64,000 nucleotides of DNA from Haliotis rufescens (lineage: Eukaryota). A model generated the notes under the pieces. It had not been told where the DNA came from and did not search any database. It was given only the letters and a program-made list of their open reading frames with translations. The stretch lies in assembly GCF_023055435.1 (NCBI RefSeq), contig NW_025963779.1, positions 38,440,001 through 38,504,000 of the forward strand. The letters run 5' to 3'. Shown piece after piece: positions 1 to 42,300 of this stretch (positions within the stretch are counted from its first letter, which is position 1; every line of letters starts with the position of its first letter). The translations under genes and the position numbers were made by a program.

Positions 1-620
1 TGTTTACTGTCCAGGGATACAGAAATAGATTCGTTCACTGTCCAGGGTTACAATACTAGATTCGTTTACTGTCCAGGGATACAATACTAGATTCGTTTCC
101 TGTCCAGGGATACAGAAATAGATTCATTTACTGTCCAGGGATACAATACTAGATTCTTTTACTGTCGAGGGATACAATACTAGATTCGTTTCCTGTCCAG
201 GGATACAATACTAGATTCGTTTCCTGTCCAGGGATACAATGCTAGATTTGTTTACTGTCAGGGATACAATGCTAGATTTGTTTACTGTCAGGGATACAAT
301 GCTAGATTTGTTTACTGTCCAGGGATACAGAAATAGATTCGTTCACTGTCCAGAGTTACAATACTAGATTCGTTTACTGTCCAGGGATACAATACTAGAT
401 TCATTTACTGTCCAGGGATACAATGCTAAATTCGTTTACTGTCCAGGGATACAATGCTAGATTTTTTTACTGTCCAGGGATACAATGCTAGATTTTTTTA
501 CTGTCCAGGGATAAAATGCTAGATTCGTTTACTGTCCAGGGATACAATGCTAGATTCGTTTAGTGTCCAGGGATACAATGCTAGATTTGTTTACTGTCCA
601 GGGATACAATGCTAGATTTT
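1..620. repeat. 31-bp minisatellite (tttactgtccagggatacaatactagattcg), runs off the window start
   Basis: About 20 tandem copies read directly. Confidence 0.95.
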
Positions 621-6819: not shown

Positions 6820-9175
6820 GGAGCACACAACAGACAAGGACTGGACACAGTGTAGCACACCACAGACTGGGGCAGGACAGAGTGTAGCACACCACAGACT
6901 GGGGCAGGACACAGTGTAGCACACCACACACAGGGGCAGGACACATTGTAGCACACCACAGACAGGGGCAGGACACAGTGTAGCTCACAACAGACACGGA
7001 CTGGACACAGTGTAGCACACCACAGACAGGGGCTGGACACAGTGTAGCACACAACAGACAAAGACTGGACACAGTGTAGCACACAACAGACTGGGGCAGG
7101 ACACAACACGGACAGGGGTAGGGAACACCACACACAGGGGCAGAACACAGTGTAGCACACCACAGACTGGCAGGACACAGTGTAGCACACCACAGACTGG
7201 GGCAGGACACAACACGGACAGGGGTAGGGAACACCACACACAGGGGCAGAACACAGTGTAGCACACCACAGACTGGCAGGACACAGTGTAGCACACCACA
7301 GACTGGGGCAGGACACAACACGGACAGGGGTAGGGAACACCACACACAGGGGCAGAACACAGTGTAGCACACCACAGACTGGCAGGACACAGTGTAGCAC
7401 ACAACAGACTGGGGCAGGACACAACACGGACAGGGGTAGGGAACACCACACACAGGGGCAGAACACAGTGTAGCACACCACAGACTGGCAGGACACAGTG
7501 TAGCACACCACAGACTGGGGCAGGACACCGTGTAGCACACCATACACAGGGGCAGGACACAGTGTAGCACACCACACACAGGGGCAGGACACAGTGTAGC
7601 ACACCACACACAGGGGCAGGGCACAGTGTAGCACACCACAAACAGGGGCAGGACACAGTGTAGCACACCACACACAGGGGCAGGGCACAGTGTAGCACAC
7701 CACAGACTGGCAGGACACAGTGTAGCACACCTCAGACTGGGGCAGGACACAGTGTAGCACACCATACACAGGGGCAGGACACAGTGTAGCACACCATAGA
7801 CAGGGGCTGGACACTGTGTAGCACACAACAGACAAGGACCGGACACAGTGTAGCACACCACAGACAGGGGCTGGACACAGTGTAGCACACCACAGACAGG
7901 GGCAGGACACAACACGGACAGGGGCAGGGAACACCACACACAGGGGCAGAACACAGTGTAGCACACCACAGACTGGCAGGACACAGTGTAGCACACAACA
8001 GACTGGGGCAGGACACAGTGTAGCACACCACAGACCGGGGCAGGACACAGTGTAGCACACTAGAGACAGGGGCTGGACACACCACAGACGGGCAGGACAC
8101 AGTGTAGCACACCACAGACAGGGGCAGGACACATTGTAGCACACCACAGACAGGGGCAGGAGACAGTGTAGCACACCACTGACAGGGGCAGGACACAGTG
8201 TAGCACAGCACAGACAGGGGCAGGACACTTTGTAGCACACCACAGACTGGGGCAGGAGACAGTGTAGCACACCACAGACAGGGGCAGCACACATTGTAGC
8301 ACACTAGAGACAGGGGCTGGACACACAACAGACAGGGGCTGGACATATTGTAGCTCACCACAGACAGGGGCAGGATACAGTGTAGCACACCACAGACAGG
8401 GGCAGGGCACACCACAGACAGGGACTGGATACACCACAGACAGGGGCAGGACACACCACAGACAGGGGCAGGGCACACCACAGACAGGGACTGGATACAC
8501 CACAGACAGGGCAGGACACAGTGTAGCACACCACAGACAGGGGCTGGACACAGTGTAGCACACCACAGACAGGGGCAGGAAATATTGTAGCACACTAGAG
8601 ACAGGGGCTGGACACAGTGTAGCATACCACAGACAGGGGCAGGAGACAGTGTAGCACACCTGAGTCATGGGCTGGACACACCACAGACAGGGGCAGGGCA
8701 CACCACAGACAGGGGCAGGGCACACCACAGACAGGGGCTGGACATACCACAGACAGGGGCTGGACACACCACAGACAGGGGCTGGACACACCACAGACAG
8801 GGGCAGGGCACACCACAGACAGGGACAGGGCACACCACACACAGGGGCAGGGCACAGTGTAGCACACCACAGACGGGCGGGCGACAGTGTAGCACACCAC
8901 AGACAGGGGCAGGACACATTGTAGCACACCACAGACAGGGGCAGGAGACAGTGTAGCACACCACTGACAGGGGCTGGACACATTGTAGCTCACCACAGAC
9001 AGGGGCAGGACACAGTGTAGCACACCACAGACAGGGGCAGGACACAGTGTAGCACACCACAGACAGGGGCAGGACACAGTGTAGCACACCACAGACAGGG
9101 GCAGGACACATTGTAGCACACCACAGACAGGGGCAGGAGGCAGTTTAGCACACCACAGACAGGGGCAGTGACACA
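6820..9175. repeat. 32-bp minisatellite (ggacacagtgtagcacaccacagacaggggca) with ~22-bp short variants
   Basis: Direct tandem repetition. Explains all Cys/Val-rich ORFs at 6759-9176. Confidence 0.95.
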
Positions 9176-11258: not shown

Positions 11259-11839
11259 CCTCTCACAACATGACCCAACCATTCACTGAGTCTTGGCCTT
11301 CATCAGAATTTGTTTTGGGATCCATAAAAACTTTCAGTGGTTGAATTTGTTTTGGGCAGGCCTTACTCTGTTCATTGGGCTCAACTGTAGATCTCTCGGT
11401 CACTGAGTCACTGAGGAAACGTGCTTAGTTTTTGAAAGTTTTCTGAGGTAAATCAGTTAAGGGCTTTCCAATACTGAGCTGGGTTTAAGGCCACTTAAAC
11501 AATATTTCAGTTCTGTCATGGTGTGTCAGCTTATCATGGAGGAAAGTTGTCAGTTTGTAAGTACAGGTGTGGTGGTGTCACACTAAGAATATAAATAAGG
11601 GCAAAAGGATTCAAAGCAATGATCACAGGGATGCTGGCATGCCCAATGGGTGCAACTCTTGGAGGACTGGGCCACCCAAGCCCTGAGTTAATAGATGTCT
11701 GTGCACGTTTAACCTATTTGGGGCCTTGTAGTACTTAAAGTGAGTTGTCAGTGGTTGGTGGCTCCAGAATGGCCATGCAGTGGCATTAGATGTCAGGTTT
11801 AGTGACACTGTGTAACGTGGTTCATAACAAACAACTTAC

Positions 11840-11949
11840 AAAGTGGACTTTCTTTGGCAGTTTCACAGGAACGATGATCCCTCCGCTCTCGTACGGCTTG
11901 TGTTCCTCCCCTGCCGTGTCACAGATGCTGAATGTGTATGGGGTTAATA
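11840..11949 (-). CDS. UBA6: UBA6-like exon E (110 bp)
   Basis: gtgttccag|TA...TTT|gtaagt. Encodes (V)LTPYTFSICDTAGEEHKPYESGGIIVPVKLPKKVHF, phase 1/0, matching exon D. Confidence 0.94.
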
Positions 11950-12083
11950 CTGGAACACAAAAGTGAATAATGTCATCTGGCACACTAACAATGCTGCCAA
12001 TATTGCTGCAGTGGTCAAATATTAACCAGTTTGGGAATTTAAAGATAATGAAATTTGAAATAAGATGTTTTGATTAAAACAAT

Positions 12084-12750
12084 CATTATAGCTAAAATGG
12101 ATAGATTTTGGTTTGTTGTTTAACGCCGCACTCAGCAATATTCAAGCTATATGACGGCGGTCTGTAATTAATCAAGTGACCAGACAAATCCAGTGATTTA
12201 TATCATGAGCATCGATTCGCGGAATTGGGATCAATGACATGCATCAACCAAGTCAGCGAGCCTGACCACCCGATCCTGTTAGTCGCCTTTTACGACAAGC
12301 ATAGTCACCTATTACGGCAAGCATGGGTTGCTGAAGACCTATTCTACCCCGGAATCTTCACGGGTCTAAAATGGAAAGAATTATCATTAAACCGCCCGCA
12401 TGTTATCAGAAATGAGCGGGCCACTGTAACTTGATAATGCCTTCATATTGCTTGACGATGGGCCATTATCACTCCCGTTGGTAGGTGACGTCATATTGAT
12501 GTTCAATAGTGACGTCATCTGGTTTGATCTATGACGTTTCCATATTCGTAAAAGTGGGTCAGTGACATTCGTTGTGTGTTGATTGCAGTAAATGTTTCAA
12601 AACCGATATTGTTATTTATTTTTATTTGATAACAAATTCTATCCATTTTAGCTATAATAACGGTAACCCTATTTTTCAGGGCATTATCATTTGCAGAAGC
12701 CCTCAGATTATTATTATAATGCCCTGAATAATAGTGTTACCCTTATATAA
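12084..12750. mobile_element. Non-autonomous DNA element with inverted repeats and a long 3' hairpin (host of the SINE above)
   Basis: attatagctaaaatggataga ... tctatccattttagctataat inverted pair. Hairpin at 12662-12741. Confidence 0.6.
12109..12367 (-). mobile_element. SINE-like retroposon family 1, nested in another element
   Basis: Reverse copy of 11007-11258. Imperfect ~16-bp TSD taaaatggatagattt / taaaatggaaagaatt. Confidence 0.88.
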
Positions 12751-12823
12751 TAGTGGCAATCTAGAGTCAGTGATTAAGAAAGGGTTTTAATGCTGTTTTT
12801 GACAGTATTTCAAGGTGGCCATA

Positions 12824-14049
12824 CAGTGATCCCTCGCTACGACGCTACCTTCGGGGTCCAAATAATTGGTGAGCATTATAGGTGATCAGCGGTTTAACCG
12901 AGGTAAAGTCGTAGGAGGTAGATGACCAACAAATCAGTACACATGCTCTGCCTTCCTAGAACGATCTAGGTTGCAAGTTTAAGAGTTTAAAAAAAGAAAG
13001 ATGAGAATAGAAGTTGTTTGTGATTTAAAGTGTCAAAAAAGACTTATCGAGTATTTATATGCACTTTCAAAAAAACAATTTGTATCCCTTTAGCGAATTC
13101 AGGTGAATAAACATGTATAACAGACTTGGTCAATAAAAGTATGAAATTTGATATAAAACATCATGAGACATGATGATTTACCATTTAAAATTATTTCTTT
13201 CTCTCCAAGGCATTGTTTTATATGCAGAGCTAAAGATTACCGTGTGTATTTTTTGTAAACTAAGCCAGAAATAGCAATCAGCTGTGTACACGTTTCCTCC
13301 CAATCGACTGGAGATTCAGTTAAAAAGTACCCAATGATACAATTTCAAAGAATTTTGATGCAATGGTCGGAAGAAATTGTATCTGAATTTATTATTTTAT
13401 CCGGAATAATATATTCCAATATCGTGTTATTTTAGATGTAGCTTCCACTGTATATACTTAAAATTATAAAAACCATAAGCGTAGCACTTTGGTACAGATG
13501 GTATGCAGGGTATTATTTTACGTATGGAACAATTTGACCAGTCACCGTAGAGACTTCCAGCCCTACATGTTTTTCAATTGCGAAAACATTATGTTGACAT
13601 TTAATAGTCAAACTGCCTCAAATATGACTTTTAGCGAGTTATGGTACAGCATTTATGATATGTGTATCCGTTCGTTTCAAGGCGTCAATAGAAGTAATCT
13701 GACCATGGTTGCTGTAAATAACGGTGAGTTGTGCGATCTACCAATCACTTCGCATATGATTTCGCCGAAATTATTGTAAACATTATTCTAATTTTTGAAT
13801 GAAATTTTGTATATAATTAATAAAATATATTGCAAACATTAGTCCAGATAAACAATGAACAATTTTTTTTTAACCAGATATTATAATAATAGGATTAAAT
13901 TGCATACTTCAGTTCGGATTTGTTGACTGGTATTTCCGGGGGTTACGTGATCGCGGTGATCAATGTTTATTAAAAATGTTAGTAAATTTTGGGAGCCATG
14001 CTTTACTGCGCACTAAAACCAAGTTAGTGCTATATTGAAGAGCGCACTG
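12824..14049. mobile_element. pogo/Tigger-like MITE carrying a shared ~750-bp core
   Basis: TA|CAGTG...CACTG|TA with imperfect TIRs. The core at 13208-13955 recurs at 38447 and 59538. Confidence 0.65.
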
Positions 14050-14158
14050 TATTTATATGTTGGAGTACAACAAAAAGTCATTTCAACTTCAAGAAATCAA
14101 CAAGAAAAGTCCCAATTCAACTTTCATTGTTTTATTTCAGTTTGAGGGTGAAGTTTAC

Positions 14159-14282
14159 CTTTGATCTGGCAAAGCTGACCATTGAGTGAGGTCATCCCTC
14201 TGACCTCCTTGAAAGTCACTGTGGCATCAGACTCAAGGCCATGCATCTGGTTGTCTAGGCATGTCACAACCCCTGGGGTAGC
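14159..14282 (-). CDS. UBA6: UBA6-like exon D (124 bp), first catalytic cysteine half-domain region
   Basis: ttttgttgtag|GCT...AAAG|gtaaac. Encodes [41 protein letters not shown], phase 0/1. Not in the ORF track. Confidence 0.95.
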
Positions 14283-17200
14283 CTACAACAAAAACACAAG
14301 TTACAACCCCTGGAGTAGCCTAAAACAGACACACGTCGCAACCCCTGGGGACAGCCTGCAAGATACACATCACAACCCCTGGGGACAGCCTGCAAGATAC
14401 ACATCACAACCCCTGGGGACAGCCTGCAAGATACACATCACAACCCCTGGGGACAGCCTGCAAGATACACATCACAACCCCTGGGGACAGCCTGCAAGAT
14501 ACACATCACAACTCCTGGGGACAGCCTGCAAGATACTCATCACAACCACTGGGGACAGCCTGCAAGATACACATCACAACCCCTGGGGACAGCCTGCAAC
14601 ATACACAATACAACCCCTGGGGACAGCCTGCAACATACACATCACTACCACTGGGGACAGCCTGCAACATACACATCACTACCCCTGGCAACAGCCTGCA
14701 ACATACACATCACAACTCCTGGGGACAGCCTGCAAGATACACATCACAACCCCTGGGGACAGCCTGCAACATACACATCACAACCCCTGGGGACAGCCTG
14801 CAACATACACATCACAACCCCTGGCAACAGCCTGCAACATACACATCACAACTCCTGGGGACAGCCTGCAACATACACATCACAACCCCTGGGGACAGCC
14901 TGCAAGATACACATCACAACCACTGGGGACAGCCTGCAACATACACATCACAACCACTGGGGACAGCCTGCAACATACACATCACAACCCCTGGGGACAG
15001 CCTGCAAGATACACATCACAACCACTGGGGACAGCCTGCAACATACACATCACAACCACTGGGGACAGCCTGCAACATACACATCACAACCACTGGGGAC
15101 AGCCTGCAAGATACACATCACAACCACTGGGGACAGCCTGCAAGATACACATCACAACCACTGGGGACAGCCTGCAAGATACACATCACAACCACTGGGG
15201 ACAGCCTGCAAGATACACATCACAACCACTGGGGACAGCCTGCAACATACACATCACAACCACTGGGGACAGCCTGCAAGATACACATCACAACCACTGG
15301 GGACAGCCTGCAAGATACACATCACAACCCCTGGGGACAGCCTGCAACATACACATCACAACCACTGGGGACAGCCTGCAACATACACATCACAACCACT
15401 GGGGACAGCCTGCAAGATACACATCACAACCACTGGGGACAGCCTGCAAGATACACATCACAACCACTGGGGACAGCCTGCAACATACACATCACAACCA
15501 CTGGGGACAGCCTGCAAGATACTCATCACAACCACTGGGGACAGCCTGCAACATACACATCACAACCACTGGGGACAGCCTGCAAGATACACATCACAAC
15601 CACTGGGGACAGCCTGCAAGATACACATCACAACCCCTGGGGACAGCCTGCAACATACACATCACAACCACTGGGGACAGCCTGCAAGATACACATCACA
15701 ACCCCTGGGGACAGCCTGCAAGATACACATCACAACCACTGGGGACAGCCTGCAACATACACATCACAACCACTGGGGACAGCCTGCAAGATACACATCA
15801 CAACCACTGGGGACAGCCTGCAAGATACACATCACAACCACTGGGGACAGCCTGCAACATACACATCACAACCACTGGGGACAGCCTGCAACATACACAT
15901 CACAACCACTGGGGACAGCCTGCAAGATACACATCACAACCCCTGGGGACAGCCTGCAACATACACATCACAACCACTGGGGACAGCCTGCAACATACAC
16001 ATCACAACCACTGGGGACAGCCTGCAAGATACACATCACAACCACTGGGGACAGCCTGCAAGATACACATCACAACCCCTGGGGACAGCCTGCAACATAC
16101 ACATCACAACCACTGGGGACAGCCTGCAAGATACACATCACAACCACTGGGGACAGCCTGCAACATACACATCACAACCACTGGGGACAGCCTGCAAGAT
16201 ACACATCACAACCACTGGGGACAGCCTGCAAGATACACATCACAACCCCTGGGGACAGCCTGCAACATACACATCACAACCACTGGGGACAGCCTGCAAG
16301 ATACACATCACAACCCCTGGGGACAGCCTGCAAGATACACATCACAACCACTGGGGACAGCCTGCAACATACACATCACAACCACTGGGGACAGCCTGCA
16401 AGATACACATCACAACCACTGGGGACAGCCTGCAAGATACACATCACAACCACTGGGGACAGCCTGCAACATACACATCACAACCACTGGGGACAGCCTG
16501 CAACATACACATCACAACCACTGGGGACAGCCTGCAAGATACACATCACAACCCCTGGGGACAGCCTGCAACATACACATCACAACCACTGGGGACAGCC
16601 TGCAACATACACATCACAACCACTGGGGACAGCCTGCAAGATACACATCACAACCACTGGGGACAGCCTGCAAGATACACATCACAACCCCTGGGGACAG
16701 CCTGCAACATACACATCACAACCACTGGGGACAGCCTGCAAGATACACATCACAACCACTGGGGACAGCCTGCAACATACACATCACAACCACTGGGGAC
16801 AGCCTGCAACATACACATCACAACCACTGGGGACAGCCTGCAAGATACACATCACAACCCCTGGGGACAGCCTGCAACATACACATCACAACCACTGGGG
16901 ACAGCCTGCAACATACACATCACAACCACTGGGGACAGCCTGCAACATACACATCACAACCACTGGGGACAGCCTGCAACATACACATCACAACCACTGG
17001 GGACAGCCTGCAACATACACATCACAACCACTGGGGACAGCCTGCAACATACACATCACAACCACTGGGGACAGCCTGCAAGATACACATCACAACCACT
17101 GGGGACAGCCTGCAACATACACATCACAACCACTGGGGACAGCCTGCAAGATACACATCACAACCACTGGGGACAGCCTGCAAGATACACATCACAACCC

Positions 17201-19530
17201 CTGGGGACAGCCTGCAACATACACATCACAACCACTGGGGACAGCCTGCAACATACACATCACAACCACTGGGGACAGCCTGCAACATACACATCACAAC
17301 CACTGGGGACAGCCTGCAACATACACATCACAACCACTGGGGACAGCCTGCAAGATACACATCACAACCACTGGGGACAGCCTGCAAGATACACATCACA
17401 ACCCCTGGGGACAGCCTGCAAGATACACATCACAACCACTGGGGACAGCCTGCAACATACACATCACTACCCCTGGGGACAGCCTGCAACATACACATCA
17501 CAACCACTGGGGACAGCCTGCAACATACACATCACAACTACTGGGGACAGCCTGCAACATACACATCACAACCACTGGGGACAGCCTGCAAGATACACAT
17601 CACAACCCCTGGGGACAGCCTGCAACATACACATCACAACCACTGGGGACAGCCTGCAACATACACATCACAACCACTGGGGACAGCCTGCAACATACAC
17701 ATCACAACCCCTGGGGACAGCCTGCAACATACACATCACTACCCCTGGGGACAGCCTGCAAGATACACATCACTACCCCTGGGGACAGCCTGCAACATAC
17801 ACATCACAACCACTGGGGACAGCCTGCAACATACACATCACAACCACTGGGGACAGCCTGCAACATACACATCACAACCACTGGGGACAGCCTGCAAGAT
17901 ACACATCACAACCCCTGGGGACAGCCTGCAACATACACATCACTACCCCTGGGGACAGCCTGCAAGATACACATCACAACCACTGGGGACAGCCTGCAAG
18001 ATACACATCACAACCACTGGGGACAGCCTGCAAGATACACATCACAACCACTGGGGACAGCCTGCAAGATACACATCACAACCACTGGGGACAGCCTGCA
18101 AGATACACATCACAACCCCTGGGGACAGCCTGCAATATACACATCACTACCCCTGGGGACAGCCTGCAAGATACACATCACAACCCCTGGGGACAGCCTG
18201 CAAGATACACATCACTACCCCTGGGGACAGCCTGCAAGATACACATCACAACCCCTGGGGACAGCCTGCAACATACACATCACTACCCCTGGGGACAGCC
18301 TGCAAGATACACATCACTACCCCTGGGGACAGCCTGCAACATACACATCACTACCCCTGGGGACAGCCTGCAAGATACACATCACAACTCCTGGGGACAG
18401 CCTGCAACATGCACATCACTACCCCTGGGGACAGCCTGCAAGATACACATCACAACCCCTGGGGACAGCCTGCAAGATACACATCACAACTCCTGGGGAC
18501 AGCCTGCAACATGCACATCACTACCACTGAGGACAGCCTGCAACATGCACATCACTACCCCTGGGGACAGCCTGCAAGATACACATCACAACCCCTGGGG
18601 ACAGCCTGCAAGATACACATCACAACTCCTGGGGACAGCCTGCAAGATACACATCACAACTCCTGGGGACAGCCTGCAACATACACATCACTACCCCTGG
18701 GGACAGCCTGCAACATGCACATCACAACCCCTGGGGACAGCCTGCAAGATACACATCACAACCCCTGGGGACAGCCTGCAACATACACATCACAACCACT
18801 GGGGACAGCCTGCAAGATACTCATCACAACCACTGGGGACAGCCTGAAAGATACACATCACAACTCCTGGGGACAGCCTGCAAGATACACATCACAACCA
18901 CTGGGGACAGCCTGCAACATACACATCACAACTCCTGGGGACAGCCTGCAAGATACTCATCACAACCCCTGGGGACAGCCTGCAAGATACTCATCACAAC
19001 CACTGGGGACAGCCTGCAAGATACACATCACAACCCCTGGGGACAGGCTGCAAGATACACATCACAACCCCTGGGGACAGCCTGCAAGATACACATCACA
19101 ACCACTGGGGACAGCCTGCAAGATACTCATCACAACCACTGGGGACAGCCTGCAAGATACACATCACAACTCCTGGGGACAGCCTGCAAGATACACATCA
19201 CAACCCCTGGGGACAGCCTGCAAGATACACATCACAACCACTGGGGACAGCCTGCAAGATACACATCACTACCCCTGGGGACAGCCTGCAAGATACACAT
19301 CACAACCACTGGGGACAGCCTGCAAGATACACATCACAACTCCTGGGGACAGCCTGCAAGATACACATCACAACCACTGGGGACAGCCTGCAAGATACAC
19401 ATCACTACCCCTGGGGACAGCCTGCAAGATACACATTACAATCCCTGGGCGTAGCCTACAACAGAAACATAAGTTACAACCCCTGGGGACAGCCTGCAAC
19501 ATACACATCACAACCCCTGGGGTAGCCTGA
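14283..19530. repeat. 34-bp minisatellite (cacaacccctggggacagcctgcaagatacacat), ~150 copies, derived from the exon D splice acceptor
   Basis: Minus-strand unit atgtgtatcttgcag|gctgtccccaggggttgtg versus the real junction ttttgttgtag|gctaccccaggggttgtg. Confidence 0.97.
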
Positions 19531-20409
19531 AATAGAAACACAAGTTACAACACATTTCATACTGTGACAAATTTCTAGAATTTATGTGTTTCATGACTAG
19601 GGTCCTCAAGTTATGCAACAGTATTTCATTCTGGTGATCCCCCTAAATCCTGATGTATAACAACAAGGACCCTTAGCTTTCATGATTAATTACAAAAACT
19701 GATTATTGTTCTGCTCAACAACATAAAATAACAAGAACGTTGACTTGCGTTGTGACCTCAAGACACTGGCACAAGTAGAGCTGTCCATATAATCACAAGT
19801 GGGTTTCAATGCCTTGTCACAGAAATCATTAGATTGGCATTATGTTCAATGTAAAAACATAGGGTTGCCTTCTGCAAGTAGGCCACAGGTCCATGTTCTA
19901 CACTGTTTAACCCCTCATTAATACGGTAAGTGTTACGTTGTCTCAAACTGCACTGCATTACGTAGCTTTGGTTTCTTACTTGTTTTATTTCATCCAGTAC
20001 TTGAGTTTAAAAACATTCCACCGGGCAGTTGACGGAATTTCATAATCAAATCTCCTCAGCATAAATGATTATTGTACACAATTCAGGTGCATCTATTATG
20101 ACTAAAGACCTCATCTGCACTCATACCTTGTATGGACAGCTACTTAACTAGTTATGAAATTAGAGTTTTGTTTAAATAGTCACTTAAATAAGACAGACAA
20201 GACAGTAATTCACTACTCGACTGGGCAATTGTGAAGCTCATAATGGTCTGCCTAAAGCCTTAACCCCAGACATCAATCTGCAGCCACATGTTGTTCTATC
20301 ACCACCAGACAGAACAGCCTCAGGCACCACCATTTGCATAAAAGTCTATATCAAATTAAAGAATGAATGAGAAGAGTCTCTTCCATTTCCTTCTGCACTA
20401 CAAACATCA

Positions 20410-23400
20410 TCTTAACCTGTCTCCTGAAGATCCTACTGTGTCAATTCAACCTGTCTCCTGAAAATCCCACAAGGTCAACTCATGTGTCTCCCAAGATCCC
20501 ACTGGGTCAACTCAACCTGTCTCCTGAAGATCCTACTGTGTCAACTCAACCTGTCTCCTGAAGATAACACTAGGTCAACTCATGTGTCTCCTGTAGATCC
20601 TACCAGGTCAACTAAACATGATTCATGAAGATCCCACTGGGTCAACTCAACCTGTCTCCTGTAGATCCCACTGGGTCAACTCAACCTGTCTCCTGAAGAT
20701 CCCACTAGGTCAACTCATGTGTCTCCTGTAGATCCTACTGGGTCAACAAAACGTGATTCATGAAGATCCCACTGGGTCAACTCAACCTGTATCCTGAAGA
20801 TCCCACTGGGTCAACTCAACCTGTCTCCTGTAGATCCTACTGGGTCAACTCCACCTGTCTCCTGAAGATCCTACTGTGTCAACTCAACCTGTCTCCCGAA
20901 GATCCCGCTAGGTCGACTCATGTGTCTCCTGTAGATCCTACTGGGTCAACTCAACCTGTCTCCTGAAGATAACACTAGGTCAACTCATGTGTCTCCCGAG
21001 ATCCCACTGGGTCAACTCTACTTGTCTCCTGAAGATCCCACTAGGTCAACTCAACGTGATTCATAAAGATCCCACTGGGTCAACTCAACCTGTATCCTAT
21101 AGATCCTACTGGGTCAACTTAACCTGTCTCCTTAAGATAACACTAGGTAAACTCATGTGTCTCCTGTAGATCCTACCGGGTCAACCAAACAAGATTCATG
21201 AAGATCCCACTGGGTCAACTCAACCTGTCTCCTGAAGATCCTACTGGGTCAACTCAACGTGATTCATGAAGATCCCACTGGGTCAACTCAACCTGTCTCC
21301 TGAAGATCCCACTGGGTCAACTCAACCTGTCTCCTGAAGATCCCATAGGGTCAACTCTACCTGTATCCTGAAGATCCTACTGGGTCAACTCAACCTGTCT
21401 CCTGAAGATCCCACGGGGTCAACTCAACCTGTATCCTGTAGATCCTACTGGGTCAACTCAACCTGTCTCATGAAGATCCCGCTAGGTCGACTCATGTGTC
21501 TCCTGTAGATCCCACTGGGTCAACTCAACCTGTCTCCTGAAGATAACACTAGGTCAACTCATGTGTCTCCCGAGATCCCAGTGGGTCAACTCTACTCGTC
21601 TCCTGAAGATCCCACTTGGTCAACTCAACGTGATTCATAAAGATCCCACTGGGTCAACTCAACCTGTATCCCAAAGATCCTACTGGGTCAACTCAACCTG
21701 TCTCCTGTAGATCCTACTGGGTCAACTCAACGTGATTCATGAAGATCCCACTGGGTCAACTCAACCTGTCTCCTGAAGATCCCACTGGGTCAACTCAACG
21801 TGATTTATGAAGATCCCACTGGGTCAACTCAACCTGTATCCTGTAGATCCTACTGGGTCAACTCAACCTGTCTCCCGAAGATCCCACTAGGTCGACTCAT
21901 GTGTCTCCTGTAGATCCTACTGGGTCAACTCAACCTGTCTCCTGAAGATAACACTAGGTCAACTCATGTGTCTCCCGAGATCCCACTGGGTCAACTCTAC
22001 TTGTCTCCTGAAGATCCCACTGGGTCAACTCAACGTGATTCATAAAGATCCCACTGGGTCAACTCAACCTGTATCCCAAAGATCCCACTGGGTCAGCTCA
22101 ACCTGTCTCCTGTAGATCCTACTGGGTCAACTCAACGTGATTCATGAAGATCCCACTGGGTCAACTGAACCTGTCCCCTGAAGATCCCGCTGGGTCAACT
22201 CAACCTGTCTCCTGTAGATCCTACTGGGTCAACTCAACGTGATTCATGAAGATCCCACTGGGTCAACTCAACCTGTCCCCTGAAGATCCCGCTGGGTCAA
22301 CTCAACGTGATTCATGAAGATCCCACTTGGTCAACTCAACCTGTCTCCTGAAGATCCCGCTGGGTCAACTCAACCTGTCTCCTGAAGATCCCACTGGGTC
22401 AACTCATGTGTCTCCTGTAGATCCTACTGGGTCAACAAAACGTGATTCATGAAGATCCCACTGGGTCAACTCAACCTGTATCCTGAAGATCCCACTGGGT
22501 CAACTCAACCTGTCTCCTGTAGATCCCACTGGGTCAACTCCACCTGTCTCCTGAAGATCCTACTGGGTCAACTCAACGTGATTCATGAAGATCCCACTGG
22601 GTCAACTCTACCTGTATCCTGAAGATCCTACTGGGTCAACTCAACCTGTATCCTGTAGATCCTACTGGGTCAACTCAACCTGTCTCCTGAAGATAACACT
22701 AGGTCAACTCATGTGTCTCCCGAGATCCCACTGGGTCAACTCTACTTGTCTCCTGAAGATCCCACTGGGTCAACTCAACATGATTCATAAAGATCCCACT
22801 GGGTCAACTCAACCTGTATCCCAAAGATCCCACTGGGTCAACTCAACCTGTCTCCTGTAGATCCTACTGGGTCAACTCAAAGTGATTCATGAAGATCCCA
22901 CTGGGTCAACTCAACCTGTCCCCTGAAGATCCAGCTGGGTCAACTCAACCTGTCTCCTGAGGATCCCACTGGGTCAACTCAACCTGTCTCCTGAAGATCC
23001 TACTGGGTCAACTCAACGTGATTCATGAAGATCCCACTGGGTCAACTCAACATGATTCATGAAGATCCCACTGGGTCAACTCAACCTGTATCCTGAAGAT
23101 CCCACTGGGTCAACTCAACCTGTATCCTGAAGATCCCACTGGGTCAACTCAACCTGTCTCCTGAAGATCCCACTGGGTCAACTCAACGTGATTCATGAAG
23201 ATCCCACTGGGTCAACTCAACCTGTCTCCTGAAGATCCCACTGGGTCAACTCAACCTGTCTCCTGAAGATCCTACTGGGTCAACTCAACGTGATTCATGA
23301 AGCTCCCACTGGGTCAACTCAACCTGTTTCCTGGAGATCCCACTGGGTCAACTCAACCTTTCTCCTGAAGATCCCATTGGGTCAACTCAACCTGTCTCCT

Positions 23401-24410
23401 GTAGATCCTACTGGGTCAACTCAACCTGTCTCCTGAAGATAACACTAGGTCAACTCATGTGTCTCCCGAGATCCCACTGGGTCAACTCTACTTGTCTCCT
23501 GAAGATCCCACTTGGTCAACTCAACGTGATTCATAAAGATCCCACTGGGTCAACTCAACCTGTATCCTGAAGATCCCACTGGGTCAACTCAACCTGTCTC
23601 CTGTAGATCCTCCTGGGTCAACTTAACCTGTCTCCTGAAGATAACACTAGGTAAACTCATGTGTCTCCCAAGATTCCCCCTGGGTCAACTCTACCTGTCT
23701 CCTGAAGATCCTACTGGGTCAACTCAACCTGTCTCCTGAAGATAACACTAGGTCAACTCATGTGTCTCCTGTAGATCCTACCGGATCAACTCTACCTGTA
23801 TCCTGAAGATCCCACTGGGTCAACAAAACGTGATTCATGAAGATCCCACTGGGTCAACTCAACTTGTATCCTGAAGATCCCACTGGGTCAACTCAACCTG
23901 TATCCCAAAGATCCCACTGGGTCAACTCAACCTGTCTCCTGAAGATCCTACTGGGTCAACTCAACGTGATTCATGAAGATCCCACTGGGTCAACTCAACC
24001 TGTCTCCTGAAGATCCCACTGGGTCAACTCAACCTGTGACCTGAAGATCCCACTGGGTCAACTCAACCTGTCTCCTGAAGATCCTACTGGGTCAACTCAA
24101 CGTGATTCATGAAGATCCCACTGGGTCAACTCAACCTGTCTCCTGAAGATCCCACTTGGTCAACTCAACCTGTCTCCTGAAGATCCCATTGGGTCAACTC
24201 TACCTGTATCCTGAAGATCCTACTGGGTCAACTCAACCTGTCTCCTGAAGATCCCACTGGGTCAACTCAACCTGTCTCCTGAAGATCCCACTGGGTCAAA
24301 TCAACCTGTCTCCTGAAGATCCTACTGGGTCAACTCTACCTGTCTCCTGAAGATCCCACTAGGTCAACTCAACGTGATTTAAGATACCACTGGGTCAACT
24401 GAATGAGTTT
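20410..24410. repeat. 34-bp minisatellite (gatcccactgggtcaactcaacctgtctcctgaa) with several variant unit types
   Basis: About 115 tandem copies. Variants include cgtgattcatgaa and the ataacactagg type. Confidence 0.95.
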
Positions 24411-25709
24411 TCTGAAGTTACAACTAATCAATACCAAAAGGGTGAACTTGACAGTACTTAGTTTCAGTTGGTTTCTTGCAGTTCCCACTTTGTCCACTCA
24501 TCAGCTTGTCCTGCCATCCCTTGCCTAGCAGAAGTTGCGGCATGTCTTATCCTACATTATAAAAGCTTCCGTGATTGATGATTCACATATCAACAAACAC
24601 AGCCTCTGAAAGTTAAAGTACAAGGCTCAGTCATGTAGTACTTGTTTAAATTAAAACAACAACTCGCTGGACTGTCATCCAACTAAGTTGCAGCAAGGTA
24701 ATGAAATCTTGCGTCAGCGTGATCAAAGAACAAAGATCAACACAAGGTCATAATTCAACATTACTTCCAGGAAAGGCATTTTTGATTTCTTGTTGATGGA
24801 AATTTTGCAGAACAGTTCTGCAAGATGACAAAAGTTTGAGAACATGGACAAATGTAAGCACCAAAATTTAAAATGCTGTAAAACACAAATGGCATACCCA
24901 TGATAAGTCACACTACTTTGTACCTAGACACCTTATTTCTTTGGCCTCACTGCTTTATGAGTTCAAAAGAATGATTTTTGTGGCAACCCCAAGACATATA
25001 TAACACACAAGAAACCACAATGGAAAAACAGCACATAAAATAAACTCAAAATATGGGAGCTTAAAATTGGGGTGATTAAATATTGCTGATGTGTGCATAA
25101 AACATCCCAATTTGCTATTATGACTATATAATTCAGTTGGGTTTTGTCAGGTTTAATATGATTAAATAATGCATGCCTCCACTGGTGCTTTATTGATTTC
25201 AACAACATTGGCAGCAGTTTCAATACAAGAAATGAATGGGTTGGGCAGTGCGTAAGTACATATATTTAGATTTTCTATCATTTACTGTTCACATCATCAG
25301 GGACTGTGAGTTAACAGCTTTCAATAGTTCAGTCTTGCAATGACGAAAAAAATCATCTGAAAAACACAAATGCTATAAATAAATTGCACTCAACTCTAAA
25401 TAATGGAAAATGTGGTATGCCGTTTGATGAGAAATCTATCACAGAGTGATGTGTTTTTTTTAAATACAACATGTATCTTAGTTTACATCTTCAAGCTTTC
25501 ACTGGTAATGAAGTCATGTCTGTATGCTACACTGTTTCATGGGTCATGTGTGGCAGAGTGAGTGAGGGCTGAGTGGATTGTATGACCAGAATCATGGAGA
25601 CCTGGAGCAGGCCAACAATCGGCTGTCAGTGTGATCCCAACAGAAAACATATTGGAAAACTGACGTTGCCAGACAATACATGATGATGACCATTGGAGTT
25701 GAATGCTTC

Positions 25710-26795
25710 CCCAGAATCTCCATAGAATCCTGTGTGTAGAAGGGTCTTATGCTGCCTCAGAATCCTGTGTGTAGAAGGGTCTAATGCTGCCCCAGAATAC
25801 TATGTGTAGAAGGATCTAATGCCACCCCAGAATCCTGTGTGTAGAAGGGTCTAATGCTGCCCCAGAATCCTGTGTGTAGAAGGGTCTAATGCCACCCCAG
25901 GATCATGTGTGTAGAAGGGTCTAATGCTGCCCCAGAATCTCCACAGAATCCTGTGTGTAGAATGGTCTAATGCTACTCCAGAATCCTGTGTGTAGAAGGG
26001 TCTAATGCCGCCCCAGAATCCTGTGTGTAGAAGGGTCTAAAGCTGTCCCAGAATCCTGTGTGTAGAAGGGTCAAATGCTGCCCCAGAATCCTGTGTGTAG
26101 AAGGGTCTAATGCTGCCCCAGAATCCTGTGTGTAGAAGGGTCTAATGCTGCCCCAGAATCCTGTGTGTAGAAGGGTCTAATGCCACCCCAGGATCATGTG
26201 TGTAGAAGGGTCTAATGCTGCCCCAGAATCTCCACAGAATCCTGTGTGTAGAATGGTCTAATGCTACTCCAGAATCCTGTGTGTAGAAGGGTCTAAAGCT
26301 GTCCCAGAATCCTGTGTGTAGAAGGGTCAAATGCTGCCCCAGAATCCTGTGTGTAGAAGGATCTAATGCTGCCCCAGAATCCTGTGTGTAGAAGGGTCTA
26401 ATGCTGCCCCAGAATCCTATGGGTAGAAGGGTCTAATGCTGCCCCAGAATCTCCACAGAATCCTGTGTGTAGAAGGGTCTAATGCTGCCCCAGAATCCTG
26501 TGTGTAGAAGGGTCTAATGCCGCCCCAGAATCATGTGTGTAGAACGGTCTAATGCTGCCCCAGAATCTCCACAGAATCCTATGTGTAGAAGGGTCTAATA
26601 ATGCCCCAGAATCTTCACAGAATCCTGTGTGTAGAAGGGTATAATGCTACCCCAGAATCTCCACAGAATCCTGTGTGTAGAAGGGTCTAATGCTGCCCCA
26701 GAATCTCCACAGAATCCTGTGTGTAGAAGGGTCTAATGCTGCCCCAGAATCCTGTGTGTAGAAGGGTCTAATGCTGCCCCAGAATCTCCACAGAT
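25710..26795. repeat. 35-bp minisatellite (cagaatcctgtgtgtagaagggtctaatgctgccc) with 46-bp variants
   Basis: Direct tandem repetition. Confidence 0.95.
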
Positions 26796-29834: not shown

Positions 29835-30816
29835 AGACAGGGTCAAGGGTCGTGGGTCCAGACTAGTCTATCAACTATGCTCTGCACCTACAGACAGGGT
29901 CCAGTGTCCAGGGTCCACACTAGTCTATCAACTATGCTCTGCACCTACAGACAGGGTCCAGGGTCCAGGGTCCACACTAGTCTATCAACTATGCTCTGCA
30001 CCTACAGACAGGGTCCAGGGTCCGGGGTCTACACTAGTCTATCAACTATGTTCTGCACCTACAGACAGGGTCTAGGGTCCAGACTAGTCTATCAACTATG
30101 TTCTGCACCTACAGACAGGGTCGTGGGTCTACACTAGTCTATCAACTATGTTCTGCACCTACAGACAGGGTCGAAGCCTACACTAGTCTATCAACTATGC
30201 TCTGCACCTACAGACAGGGTCCAGGGTTCAGGCTAGGCTATCGACTATGTTTTGCACCTACAGACAGGGTCCAGGGTCTACACAAGTCTATCAACTATGT
30301 TCTGCACCTACAGACAGGGTCCAGGGTCTACACTAGTCTATCAACTATGTTCTGCACCTACAGACAGGGTCCAGGGTCTACACTAGTCTACCAACTATGT
30401 TCTGCACCTACAGACAGGGTCCAGGGTCTACACTAGTCTATCAACTATGTTCTGCACCTACAGACAGGGTCCAGGGTCTACACTAGTCTATTAACTATGT
30501 CCTGCACCTACAGACAGGGTCTAGGGTCCAGACTAGTCTATCAACTATGTTCTGCACCTACAGACAGGGTCGCGGGTCTACACTAGTCTATCAACTATGT
30601 TCTGCACCTACAGACAGGGTCCAGGGTCTACACAAGTCTATCAACTATGTTCTGCACCTACAGACAGGGTCCAGGGTCTACACTAGTCTATCAACTATGT
30701 TCTGCACCTACAGACAGGGTCCAGGGTCTACACTAGTCTATCAACTATGTTCTGCACCTACAGACAGGGTCCAGGGTCTACACTAGTCTATCAACTATGT
30801 TCTGCACCTACAGACA
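29835..30816. repeat. 50-bp minisatellite (cactagtctatcaactatgttctgcacctacagacagggtccagggtcta), first units 57 bp
   Basis: Direct tandem repetition. Confidence 0.95.
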
Positions 30817-31774: not shown

Positions 31775-32210
31775 TACAATGTAGCTGTAACCTTGTGATC
31801 ACACAATGTAACTGTAACCTTGTGATCACACAATGTAGCTGTAACCTTGTGATCACACAATGTAGCTGTAACCTTGTGATCACACAATGTAGCTTTAACC
31901 TTGAGATCACACAATGTAGCTGAAACCTTGAGATCGAACAATGTAACTGTAACCTTGTGATCACACAATGTAACCGTAACCTTGAGATCAGACAATGTAA
32001 CTGTAACCTTGTGATCAAACAATGTAGCCGTAACCTTGTGATCACACAATGTAACTGTTACCTCGTGATCACACAATGTAACTGTAACCTTGTGATCACA
32101 CAATGTAGCTGTAACCTTATGATCATACAATGTAGCTGTAACCTTATGATCATACAATGTAGCTGTAACCGTGTGATCACACAATGTAACTGTTACCTCG
32201 TGATCACACA
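31775..32210. repeat. 27-bp minisatellite (acaatgtagctgtaaccttgtgatcac)
   Basis: About 16 copies, giving the 9-aa period seen in the ORFs. Confidence 0.95.
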
Positions 32211-33605
32211 CTGTAACTGTGGCCTCATAATTACATATCAGTGTTTACTATATAACTGTGGCCTCATAAATACATATCAGTGTTTACTATGAAATTGTGG
32301 CCTCATAATTACATATCAGTGTTTACTATGTAACTGTGGCCTCATAATTACATATCAGTGTTTACTATGAAATTGTGGCCTCATAATTACATATCAGTGT
32401 TTACTATGTAACTGTGGCCTCACAATTACATATCAGTGCTTACTATGTAACTGTGGCCTCATAATTACATATCAGTGTTTACTATGAAACTGTGGTCTCA
32501 TAATTACATATCAGTGTTTACTATGAAACTGTGGCCTCATAATTACATATCAGTGTTTACTATGTAACTGTGGCCTCATAATTACATATCAGTGTTTACT
32601 ATGAAATTGTGGCCTCATAATTACATATCAGTGTTTACTATGTAACTGTGGCCTCATAATTACATATCAGTGTTTACTATGTAACTGTGGCCTCATAATT
32701 ACATATCAGTGTTTACTATGAAACTGTGGCCTCATAATTACATATCAGTGTTTACTATGAAACTGTGGCCTCATAATTACATATCAGTGTTTACTATGTA
32801 ACTGTGGCCTCATAATTACATAATAGTGTTTACTATGAAAATGTGGCCTCAAAATTACATATCAGTGTTTACTATGAAACTGTGGCCTCATAATTACATA
32901 TCAGTGTTTACTATGTAACTGTGGCCTCATAATTACATATCAGCGTTTACTATGAAACTGTGGCCTCATAATTACATATCAGTGTTTACTATGAAATTGT
33001 GGTCTCATAATTACATATCAGTGTTTACTATGGAATTGTGGCCTCATAATTACATATCAGTGTTTACTATGTAACTGTGGCCTCATAATTACATATCAGT
33101 GTTTACTATGAAAATGTGGCCGCAAAATTACATATCAGTGTTTACTATGAAATTGTGGCCTCATAATTACATATCAGTGTTTACTATGTAACTGTGGCCT
33201 CATAATTACATATCAGTGTTTACTATGAAATTGTGGCCTCATAATTACATATCAGTGTTTACTATGTAACTGTGGCCTCATAATTACATATCAGTGTTTA
33301 CTATGTAACTGTGGCCTCATAATTACATATCAGTGTTTACTATGAAAATGTGGCCTCATAATTACATATCAGTGTTTACTATGAAACTGTGGCCTCATAA
33401 TTACATATCAGTGTTTACTATGTAACTGTGGCCTCATAATTACATAATAGTGTTTACTATGAAAATGTGGCCTCAAAATTACATATCAGTGTTTACTATG
33501 AAACTGTGGCCTCATAATTACATATCAGTGTTTACTATGTAACTGTGGCCTCATAATTACATATCAGTGTTTACTTTATAACTGTGGCCTCATAATCACA
33601 TATAA
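32211..33605. repeat. 39-bp minisatellite (aactgtggcctcataattacatatcagtgtttactatgt)
   Basis: About 35 copies. Confidence 0.95.
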
Positions 33606-33624
33606 TCTATTACTTTGAATCTCT

Positions 33625-34308
33625 GGCCTAATATTTGACAGCTTGCCATATCTACAACAATGGGGCCTCGTCCTCATATTTGAGGGGTTAACATATCTAC
33701 AACTCTGGGACCTCGTCCTCATATTTGAGAGCTTGCCATACATACAACACTGGGACCTCGTCCTCATATTTGAGAGCTTGCCATACATACAACTCTGGGA
33801 CCTCGTCCTCATATTTGAGAGCTTGCCATACATACAACACTGGGACCTCATCCTCATACTTGAGAGCTTGCCATACATACAACTCTTGGACCTCGTCCTC
33901 ATATTTGAGAGCTTGCCATACATACAACTCTGGGGCCTCGTCCTCATATTTGAGAGCTTGCTATACATACAACTCTGGGACCTCGTCCTCATATTTGAAA
34001 GCTTGCCATACATACAACTCTGGGGCCTCATAATTCTTGTACTTATCTGCAATGACTTGTCCTCATATTTGAGAGCTTGCCATACATACAACACTGGGAC
34101 CTCGTCCTCATATTTGAGAGCTTGCCATACATACAACTCTGGGACCTTGTCCTCATATTTGAGAGCTTGCCATACATACAACTCTGGGACCTCGTCCTCA
34201 TATTTGAGAGGTTTCCATACATACAACTCTGGGACCTCGTCCTCATATTTGAAAGCTTGCCATACATACAACTCTGGGGCCTCATAATTCTTGTACTTAT
34301 CTGCAATG
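33625..34308. repeat. 45-bp minisatellite (atatttgagagcttgccatacatacaactctgggacctcgtcctc)
   Basis: About 14 copies, giving the 15-aa period seen in the ORFs. Confidence 0.95.
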
Positions 34309-40422: not shown

Positions 40423-40545
40423 CTTGGTGATATTGTTGACAAACACCTCCCTAGGCTCTTCCCCTGTGGCATCAACAACCTCAAATTCATCCCCCAAGTC
40501 AACGAAGACACTGCCAAACACGCCATACACATCAGACGAGATGAA
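40423..40545 (-). CDS. UBA6: UBA6-like exon C (123 bp)
   Basis: tttcag|TTC...AAG|gtaaca. Encodes [41 protein letters not shown] (E1 D.G.EF.V.D.TGEEP motif). Confidence 0.95.
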
Positions 40546-41855: not shown

Positions 41856-41857
41856 AG

Positions 41858-42300
41858 TGATGTCATAATGATCATCACATTTTATGAAGTGATATCATAA
41901 TGACCATCATCACAGTTTATAAAGTGATATCATAATGATCATCTCATTTTATGAAGTGATATCATAATGATCATCATCACATTTCTTGAAGTGATATCAT
42001 AATGATCATCACATTTCTCGAAGTGATTGATATCATAATGATCATCATCTCATTTTACGAAGTGATATCATAATGATCATCACATTTTACGAAGTGATAT
42101 CATAATGATCATCACATTTCTCGAAGTGATATCATAATGATTATCACATTTCTCGAAGTGATATCCTTTTGATCATCACATTTCGTGAAGTGATATCCTA
42201 ATGATCATCATATTTCTCGAAGTGATATAATCATCATCATCATCATAGTCTTATCATTGATATCATAACAACCACTTGCGATTTAATCACTGATATCATT
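41858..42300. repeat. ~32-bp palindrome-rich minisatellite (tgatatcataatgatcatcacatttctcgaag)
   Basis: About 12 copies, decaying into (atc)n. Confidence 0.9.

What the first reader, a model, noticed from the sequence alone, without database searches (positions are those of the whole stretch)
14265..19550. A 5.2-kb minisatellite made of ~150 copies of a 3' splice site plus exon start, abutting the exon it copies
Seen: on the transcribed (minus) strand each 34-nt unit reads atgtgtatcttgcag|gctgtccccaggggttgtg. The true exon D junction is taacttgtgtttttgttgtag|gctaccccaggggttgtgaca. The units at both array ends are transitional and closer to the real junction than the homogenised middle. Inference: the intron/exon boundary itself was tandemly amplified. 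The pre-mRNA of a conserved E1 gene therefore presents ~150 CAG|G pseudo-acceptors before the acceptor that gives the normal 124-bp exon. Use of the most upstream one runs into a TGA within about five units. The array could be an inert decoy field, a copy-number-dependent modulator of splicing or NMD, or a stepwise/recursive splicing ladder.
Basis: partly seen in the sequence, partly recalled or inferred. Interest (0 to 1): 0.85.

Follow-up and report, generated by a model that had tools for sequence, protein, structure and literature searches.

The report
Splice-acceptor "mirage" minisatellite in abalone UBA6
A 5.2-kb run of about 154 tandem copies of one exon's splice acceptor sits in an intron of the red abalone UBA6 gene; it is real, belongs to a rare class called "mirage" minisatellites known from amphioxus, and does not visibly disturb splicing.

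Summary
Window 14283-19550 (minus strand) holds a 34-bp minisatellite (TRF: 152.9 copies, 95% match). Each unit is the last ~15 nt of the intron plus the first ~19 nt of exon D of UBA6 in Haliotis rufescens. Both array ends keep 37-nt ancestral-type units. The unit occurs nowhere else in the 1.33-Gb genome.

Transcript contigs from three RNA data sets, and the RefSeq protein, use only the authentic acceptor at 14282. No RNA contig covers the part of the array that was laid. All 154 pseudo-acceptors would give a stop within 33-156 nt. By a PWM trained on this gene's acceptors they are not weaker than the true site. The array has no usable donor, so recursive splicing is unlikely.

This is the kind described in amphioxus as "mirages", and it mirrors the human F7 IVS7 VNTR. 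I found no mollusc report in the held literature.

It is recurrent. UBA6 has four more junction-derived arrays and three junction-adjacent ones. The UBA1-like paralogue has a 23-bp x 90 acceptor array. Two leads from this scan's first readers elsewhere on the chromosome checked out; those readers noted many such arrays in other windows of this genome. The excess at junctions depends on the null model (P from 7e-6 to 0.05).

Best reading: a neutral, intron-inflating by-product of frequent minisatellite birth.

The parts
14283..19550 (-). Whole array: 154 tandem pseudo-acceptor units. The core is 34 bp x 152.9 at 14327-19529.
   Evidence: TRF; unit parsing; confined to this locus in the genome.
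19514..19550 (-). Most upstream unit, 37 nt, of ancestral type. It has a TAAC branch-point-like motif, a pyrimidine tract, CAG, and the first 13 exon-like bases. The pseudo-exon start at 19526 encodes ATPGVV.
   Evidence: Read directly; PWM 10.6 bits; exact match to protein residues 193-198.
14283..14355 (-). Two transitional units (36 and 37 nt) next to the true acceptor. The 37-nt one is the authentic intron end. The acceptor just upstream of it (exon-like start at 14319; its upstream tract is the 36-nt unit) is the weakest in the array.
   Evidence: PWM 5.2 bits against 10.1 on average.
14159..14282 (-). Exon D of UBA6 (124 bp, residues 193-233, FCCH domain). The authentic acceptor AG is at 14284-14283.
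   Evidence: RNA contigs end their match at 14284.
40423..40545 (-). Exon C (residues 152-192). Its donor at 40423|40422 is the partner of the exon D acceptor across a 26,140-bp intron.
11840..11949 (-). Exon E, joined directly to exon D in RNA contigs.
   Evidence: table 8 (X1 record 1, X2 record 24).
15524..16809 (-). An 18-unit (612-bp) block duplicated in tandem inside the array. 674 nt are identical at lag 612.
   Evidence: hits 612 bp apart at 100% identity.

Best explanation
This is a 'mirage' minisatellite: a tandem amplification of the intron/exon-D boundary of the red abalone UBA6 gene. A 37-nt segment was first duplicated by slippage. It ran from a GTTGTAAC motif 26 nt inside the intron to a near-identical GTTGTGAC motif 13-20 nt inside the exon (inferred from the sequence). 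One variant, shortened to 34 nt, then spread by unequal exchange and conversion to about 150 copies. The two edge units escaped homogenisation and stayed ancestral. A recent 18-unit block duplication shows that the array still turns over (shown). Every copy carries a competent-looking 3' splice site, but the spliceosome uses only the exon-proximal one, so the rest of the array is removed as part of the 26-kb intron (shown at the level of assembled transcripts). The likely reason (inferred) is exon definition. Only the last copy is followed by the exon body and lies 124 nt upstream of a good donor, and the array itself has no usable donor. Any stray use of a pseudo-acceptor gives a stop within 33-156 nt and would be cleared by nonsense-mediated decay (inferred). 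The net effect is intron inflation, not regulation. The array is one of many such junction-derived arrays in this genome.
For: The array and its unit are. The unit is confined to this locus. The gene is UBA6 of H. rufescens. RNA contigs of three runs join exon D (14284..14159) directly to exon E and stop matching the genome exactly at the acceptor. Contig depth over the laid part of the array (14322-14700) is zero in those RNA runs, while a DNA-like run covers most of that stretch. The RefSeq protein reads ...NNITK|ATPGVV.... All pseudo-acceptors lead to an in-frame stop. There is no donor in the array. A 612-bp block is duplicated. Recurrence: four further mirages and three junction-adjacent arrays in the same gene, a 23-bp x 90 acceptor mirage in the UBA1-like paralogue, and two more loci on the same chromosome. 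Precedent: amphioxus mirages leave splicing intact and their boundary units escape homogenisation (PMC3087553, PMC3902484). In human F7 IVS7, identical pseudo-donors stay silent and the exon-proximal site is used (PMC1557585).
Against: By a PWM trained on the 32 other acceptors of this gene, the pseudo-acceptors score higher (mean 10.1 bits) than the true site (7.8). Local motif strength therefore does not explain the choice, and low-level use is plausible. The RNA evidence is from assembled contigs, which drop rare isoforms and NMD targets. No raw junction counts were available. The organism labels of the runs are coded, so only one RNA run (0 mismatches) is probably the same species. Array length and its polymorphism were not verified with long reads.
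Confidence: 0.75

Rival explanations
1. The array is a copy-number-dependent modulator. Its 154 competent acceptors bind U2AF/U2, slow or divert removal of the 26-kb intron, and send a fraction of transcripts to NMD, so array length tunes UBA6 output.
For: Pseudo-acceptors score as high as or higher than real acceptors. Every one leads to an early stop. Intronic VNTR length affects splicing in other genes, for example ABCA7 (PMC5954066, title and abstract only).
Against: No contig joins exon C to the array in three RNA sets, and no array sequence appears in the RNA contigs. The same kind of array occurs at many unrelated junctions, which points to a mutational by-product rather than a tuned device. 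Amphioxus mirages and the F7 pseudo-sites are silent (PMC3087553, PMC1557585).
Confidence: 0.13
2. The array is a recursive or stepwise splicing ladder. The long intron is removed in pieces, using array acceptors as ratchet points.
For: The intron is long (26 kb) and carries many strong 3' splice sites.
Against: Recursive sites need a 5' splice site regenerated right after the AG. Here the junction would read AG|GCTGTC. Donor PWM scores in the array are 1.1 bits or less for consensus units, with a single best of 4.9, against 7.9 +/- 3.4 for real donors. All pseudo-sites cluster in the last 5.2 kb of the intron, so they would not subdivide it usefully.
Confidence: 0.03
3. The array is an assembly artefact: its size or existence comes from mis-assembly of a short repeat.
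For: Array length was not checked. Contig depth over the array in the DNA-like run X15 is only 2-3 times that of the flanks, although contig depth is not a copy number.
Against: An independent DNA-like run has a contig that crosses exon D into the array. The array has 42 distinct unit contexts, ordered variants, diverged edges and one clean 18-unit duplication, as real minisatellites do. Many similar arrays exist in the same assembly.
Confidence: 0.04
4. The unit is a dispersed satellite that only by chance resembles the exon junction.
For: A 33-bp array on another contig shares the motif tgtatgttgcagg.
Against: Strong whole-genome matches all lie in this array. The other array is 73-75% alike over the splice-like part alone. 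The terminal units grade into the unique flanks on both sides.
Confidence: 0.01

Closest known systems
Amphioxus 'mirage' minisatellites (Adh3: Canestro et al. 2002, Nucleic Acids Res 30:2871, as cited in PMC3087553; globins BflGb6/9: PMC3087553; TnC and PGBD5: PMC3902484)
   Same: They are tandem duplications spanning an intron/exon boundary, at either the 5' or the 3' side. Units carry AG/GT signals. The authentic junction is the terminal unit. Regular splicing is not disturbed. Boundary units are excluded from homogenisation. There is concerted evolution inside the array.
   Different: Those arrays are in cephalochordates and this one is in a gastropod mollusc. The amphioxus counts given in the papers read here are small (3-6 units in globin BflGb6, a triplication in PGBD5), against 154 copies and 5.2 kb here. 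Several such arrays sit in one gene here. Length instability, shown for Adh3, was not tested here.
Human F7 intron 7 37-bp VNTR (PMC1557585)
   Same: The first repeat element spans the exon boundary, so the authentic splice site is followed by identical pseudo-sites. These are functional in principle but stay silent. The exon-proximal copy is the one used.
   Different: That case is at a 5' splice site and this one is at a 3' splice site. F7 has only several pseudo-sites. The selection rule was shown by mutagenesis there and is only inferred here. At a 3' site the copy used is the last transcribed, not the first.
Recursive splice sites (ratchet points) in long introns of Drosophila and vertebrates (from general knowledge)
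   Same: They are strong intronic 3' splice-site motifs in a very long intron.
   Different: There is no juxtaposed 5' splice site (AG|GC..., donor score 1.1 bits or less), the sites are clustered at the intron's 3' end, and there is no RNA evidence.
Intronic VNTRs and repeat expansions that alter splicing (ABCA7 VNTR, PMC5954066; CAG expansions that create acceptors, PMC10614865)
   Same: They are tandem repeats in or near introns that can present splice signals.
   Different: In those cases aberrant or length-dependent splicing is observed. Here only the normal junction is seen, and the unit is a copy of the gene's own junction.

Membership tests
Mirage minisatellite (tandem duplication of an intron/exon boundary) | Head-to-tail tandem array | tested here: met
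   TRF: period 34, 152.9 copies, 95% match, 0% indels.
Mirage minisatellite (tandem duplication of an intron/exon boundary) | The unit contains both the intronic splice signal and adjacent exon bases | tested here: met
   The unit holds ~15 nt of intron 3' end including CAG, plus ~19 nt like the exon D start. The first unit encodes ATPGVV, identical to the exon.
Mirage minisatellite (tandem duplication of an intron/exon boundary) | The array is contiguous with the authentic junction, which is its terminal unit | tested here: met
   The last 37-nt unit ends at 14283 and exon D starts at 14282.
Mirage minisatellite (tandem duplication of an intron/exon boundary) | Regular splicing of the mRNA is kept | tested here: met
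   RNA contigs in three runs and the RefSeq protein use the authentic acceptor. Rare isoforms cannot be excluded from contigs.
Mirage minisatellite (tandem duplication of an intron/exon boundary) | Length instability or polymorphism between alleles | not tested
The internal 612-bp duplication shows turnover only indirectly.
Recursive splice site | A 3' splice site immediately followed by a 5' splice site (AG|GTRAGT) | tested here: not met
   Units read CAG|GCTGTC. Donor PWM is 1.1 bits or less in consensus units.
Recursive splice site | Splicing intermediates or lariats at the site | not testable with these tools
   Only assembled contigs of older runs, or miRNA-seq raw reads, were on offer.
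Regulated unproductive splicing (poison acceptor coupled to NMD) | The alternative site gives a premature stop | tested here: met
   All 154 sites give a stop within 33-156 nt.
Regulated unproductive splicing (poison acceptor coupled to NMD) | The unproductive isoform is detectable | tested here: inconclusive
   No such contig appears in three RNA sets, but contigs drop rare and degraded isoforms.

The most novel reading that the evidence does not exclude
Splice junctions are preferred birthplaces of minisatellites in the abalone genome. A junction-linked mutational process would repeatedly amplify a gene's own splice sites into arrays of tens to hundreds of fully competent decoys. Candidates are slippage in the TG-rich acceptor tracts and G-rich donor motifs, or breaks coupled to transcription and splicing. 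This would make mirage arrays a main route of intron growth in this lineage. It would also provide hundreds of natural experiments in which the spliceosome must pick one site among up to 150 equal or better copies.
Probability: 0.3. Interest if true: 0.8.

Novelty: new member of a known kind. Interest (0 to 1): 0.55.

Why it matters
The single array is a clean and extreme example of a little-known class. Its 154 acceptors score as well as or better than the real one, yet the real one is used. That makes it a natural test of how 3' splice sites are chosen, the counterpart of the F7 model for 5' sites. It argues that context (exon definition), not motif strength, decides.

The wider point concerns genome evolution. 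In this abalone a third of a 134-kb stretch around an essential housekeeping gene is minisatellite. Several introns are 90% or more array, and many arrays are copies of the gene's own splice junctions. If a genome-wide census confirms this, mirage arrays would be a general mode of intron expansion outside cephalochordates. They would also be a source of annotation errors, cryptic-splice variation and length polymorphism in an aquaculture and conservation species.

Tried and rejected
- **Dispersed satellite.** Rejected. The whole-genome search finds the unit only here.
- **Array on contig C246.** The 33-bp x 220 array shares only the acceptor-like motif, and no exon is visible at its ends. It is not related.
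- **Neighbouring array 20407-24400.** It has the same 34-bp period and looks like cag|gttgagt. Its flanks show no exon. Its similarity to the main unit is one 8-mer (P=0.04 by shuffling). Its splice-like motifs score no better than on the antisense strand. It was not counted as junction-derived.
- **Weak-decoy idea.** Rejected. The PWM puts the pseudo-sites above the true site.
- **Branch-point argument (TAAC at -19 in the true site against TGAT at -15 in the units).** Not supported as an explanation. Only 4 of 33 real acceptors in this gene have TAAC and 12 have TGAT.
- **Strong claim of junction enrichment.** Toned down. Under uniform seeding P is 7e-6. With the index array left out and a strict overlap rule P is 0.026. 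Conditioning on each array's own collapsed intron gives P = 0.048.
- **The original Adh3 mirage paper (PMC117041).** It is not held, so it is cited through PMC3087553.
- **Runs on offer.** The look-up of sequencing runs gave no run on record as RNA with raw reads other than miRNA-seq, so junction counts and NMD-sensitive isoforms could not be measured.
- **Spliced gene model.** Exons were searched by reference, and exon mapping used the public protein P0390 locally.
Full report
**What is there**

Tandem Repeats Finder reports one array at window 14327-19529, with period 34, 152.9 copies, 95% matches and no indels. On the minus strand each unit ends in ...tatcttgcag and continues gctgtccccag(g/t)ggttgtg. 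Parsing on AG|GCT gives 155 sites: 154 pseudo-acceptors from 19526 downstream and the true one at 14282. Three unit types make up 106 of the 154 units.

The two ends differ from the middle:
- The most upstream unit (19550-19514) and the last one (14319-14283) are 37 nt long and nearly identical to each other.
- Both carry ttgtaac, a T-rich tract, an AG, and gctaccccagggg.
- The upstream flank and the exon continue seamlessly from them.
- Alignment scores to this 37-mer are 21, 29 and 17 at the 5' edge and 18 and 35 at the 3' edge. They are 13-15 in the middle.

The intronic GTTGTAAC and the exonic GTTGTGAC are a 7-of-8 direct repeat 37 nt apart. Slippage between them gives exactly the ancestral unit. 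This origin is inferred from the sequence.

**The gene**

Exon D (14282..14159, 124 bp) translates to [17 protein letters not shown]... and aligns to residues 188-227 of human UBA6 structures. A single-exon NAE1-like ORF elsewhere in the genome is 99% identical to a Haliotis cracherodii protein. The UBA6 protein annotated for Haliotis rufescens sits on a contig of 94,228,061 bases, the length of this window's contig. It matches exon D exactly and reads ...NNITK|ATPGVV... across the junction. The genome is therefore red abalone.

I fetched the rest of the gene and mapped that public protein onto it locally. The results were:
- 34 coding exons and 33 GT-AG introns over 119 kb.
- Exon C is 40545..40423, so the intron holding the array is 26,140 bp, of which 13,826 bp is tandem repeat.
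- Twenty-five arrays make up 36% of the 134 kb examined.

**Is the unit a dispersed satellite?**

It is not. A whole-genome search with six units returns this array alone. The only other result is three weak hits (73-75%) to a 33-bp x 220 array on another contig, which shares only the acceptor-like motif.

**Splicing**

No run on record as RNA with raw reads was offered, apart from miRNA-seq. I laid the contigs of three probable RNA runs and one DNA-like run on 11800-14700.
- In all three RNA runs a contig covers exon D from 14284 to 14159. In two of them (X1, X2) the same contig carries on directly into exon E at 11949..11840. The contigs are 1238, 4539 and 831 nt long.
- All three contigs run on for about 600 nt upstream of exon D without matching the intron.
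- The two extra bases at 14284-14283 are the AG shared by the end of exon C and the end of the intron.
- Contig depth over 14322-14700 is zero in the three RNA runs.
- The DNA-like run covers 14322-14612 and has a 390-nt contig running from 13979 to 14368.

The dominant mRNA therefore uses the authentic acceptor, as the RefSeq model does. Contigs cannot show rare or degraded isoforms, so low-level use is not excluded.

**What the pseudo-sites could do**

- *Reading frame.* From every pseudo-acceptor the frame set by exon C meets a stop after 33-156 nt, most often 51. The most upstream one does so after 156 nt.
- *Acceptor strength.* A PWM built from the other 32 acceptors of this gene (-20 to +3) gives 7.8 bits for the true site. 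The pseudo-sites average 10.1 bits (range 5.2-10.8). Real acceptors score 7.3 +/- 3.4 by leave-one-out. Only 0.4% of background AGs reach the pseudo-site score. The decoys are therefore not weakened copies. The weakest is the one next to the true site.
- *Branch point.* A branch-point difference (TAAC against TGAT) does not separate real from pseudo sites in this gene.
- *Donor-like sites.* They are poor in the array: 1.1 bits or less in consensus units and 4.9 at best, against 7.9 +/- 3.4 for real donors. No pseudo-exon can be defined inside the array. Splicing to a unit would not regenerate a 5' splice site, so a recursive ladder is unlikely.

The choice of the last copy is best explained by exon definition. 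Only that copy is followed by the exon body and by a good donor 124 nt away. This is inference, by analogy with F7.

**Array dynamics**

Units are 95% alike at any lag. One 18-unit block is duplicated exactly, with 674 identical bases at lag 612 (15524-16197 against 16136-16809). Diverged edges and a homogenised centre are the pattern of unequal exchange described for amphioxus mirages (PMC3087553).

**What is known**

[quoted passage not shown] They were then found in amphioxus globin, TnC and PGBD5 genes. They occur at both 5' and 3' boundaries, their units carry AG/GT signals, and mRNA splicing is normal (PMC3087553, PMC3902484).

The human F7 gene has a 37-bp VNTR whose first element spans the exon 7 donor. 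Its pseudo-donors are functional but silent, and the exon-proximal site is chosen (PMC1557585).

I found no report of mirages in molluscs. The only abalone hit was a plain 27-bp intronic minisatellite in TSSK1-like.

**Recurrence**

This scan's first readers had noted splice-junction minisatellites in many other windows of this genome. I checked two that could be located:
- C1:22506935-22507883 is a 59-bp x 15.8 array of an acceptor plus the first ~36 nt of a CARD-like exon.
- C1:84455454-84456703 is a 46-bp x 27 array of the acceptor of a chitin-binding exon.

In UBA6 itself, the protein's exon ends hit repeatedly in tandem. Reading the sequence shows four further junction-derived arrays:
- Donor mirages of 64 bp x 10.6, 88 bp x 5.1 and 63 bp x 27.
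- An acceptor-side array with a TRF period of 53 bp x 3.7.

Three more arrays start or end within 50 nt of a junction and almost fill their introns: 42 bp x 120, 51 bp x 33 and 29 bp x 232.

As a control not chosen for repeats I examined the UBA1-like paralogue. It has a 23-bp x 90 array of ...ttgcag|gtgtgac units that ends 2 nt before the exon encoding residues 24-79. Another of its introns is about 90% array.

**Is there an excess at junctions?**

| Test | Observed | Expected | P |
|---|---|---|---|
| Arrays within 50 nt of a junction, uniform seeding over today's non-array intron sequence | 8 of 24 | 1.09 | 7e-6 |
| Unit must span the junction, index array left out | 4 | 1.10 | 0.026 |
| Conditioned on each array's own collapsed intron | 7 | 4.5 | 0.048 |

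Arrays away from junctions carry no splice-like motifs beyond the antisense control. A high birth rate of minisatellites, short ancestral introns and tolerance of junction copies may therefore be enough. A junction-linked mutational bias remains possible but is not shown.

**Verdict**

The thing is a new and extreme member, in a new phylum, of a known kind. The best-supported function is none: it is an intronic passenger that the splicing machinery ignores. The open points are its low-level use, its length polymorphism, and whether junctions are hot spots genome-wide.

**Limits**

Noticed in passing
L020:2086-2766 (C1:38422086-38422766), outside the window: Donor mirage in the same UBA6 gene: 64 bp x 10.6. 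The unit is the last ~17 nt of the exon for residues 463-488 plus the donor CAGG|GTAGGT and 40 nt of intron.
   Followed up: partly
L019:5824-7544 and L019:7923-8369 (C1:38415824-38418369): Two more donor mirages in UBA6. One is 63 bp x 27 (last 24 nt of an exon plus AAG|GTATCT). On a by-eye translation, use of its second donor copy appeared to add about 21 codons with no stop; this was not checked by script. The other is 88 bp x 5.1 (last 43 nt of an exon plus CAG|GTGAGT).
   Followed up: partly
L020:1797-1992; L019:9161-L020:845; L020:9573-L021:4604; L018:919-7583: Further UBA6 arrays at junctions. One is an acceptor-side array before the exon for residues 489-504. Three others (51 bp x 33, 42 bp x 120, 29 bp x 232) start or end within 5-47 nt of a junction. 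In those three introns little more than 130-730 nt is not array.
   Followed up: partly
L027:2235-4259 (C68:23347235-23349259): The UBA1-like paralogue has a 23-bp x 90 acceptor mirage (gattgtgttgcag|gtgtgac) that ends 2 nt before the exon encoding YVLGHEAMRRM... Its units read CAG|GTGTGA, a juxtaposed acceptor and donor-like motif. The intron after the exon for residues 280-317 is about 90% two arrays (26 and 28 bp).
   Followed up: partly
L016:4935-5883 and L015:4454-5703: Two first-reader leads were verified. One is a 59-bp x 15.8 array of an acceptor plus the first ~36 nt of a CARD-like exon. The other is a 46-bp x 27 array of the acceptor of a chitin-binding (peritrophin-like) exon.
   Followed up: yes
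window 2-618, 6822-9175, 20407-24400, 25702-26786, 29846-30816, 31776-34283, 41848-42268, 46911-48676, 57065-58726, 61322-64000: Ten further minisatellite tracts that do not touch exons. Together with the main array they make up about 36% of the window. Their consensus units carry no splice-like motifs beyond the antisense control.
   Followed up: partly
L012:567-7831 (C246:4108566-4115830): A 33-bp x 220 array whose unit contains atgtatgttgcag|g. No exon is visible at either end. Its origin is unknown.
   Followed up: partly
L014:718-2325 (C79:9661217-9662824): The NAE1-like gene (NEDD8-activating E1 regulatory subunit) is a single uninterrupted 535-aa ORF, 99% identical to the H. cracherodii protein. 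It may be an intronless gene or a retrogene.
   Followed up: no
window 14322-14612, run X15: In the DNA-like run the contig word depth over the array is only 65-115, against 32-56 in the unique flanks. Contig depth is not a copy number, so the array length in that sample is unknown.
   Followed up: no
window 12091-12381: A dispersed repeat in the exon D-E intron draws very high contig depth in all four runs (3x10^5 to 10^7). It is probably a high-copy transposable element or SINE.
   Followed up: no
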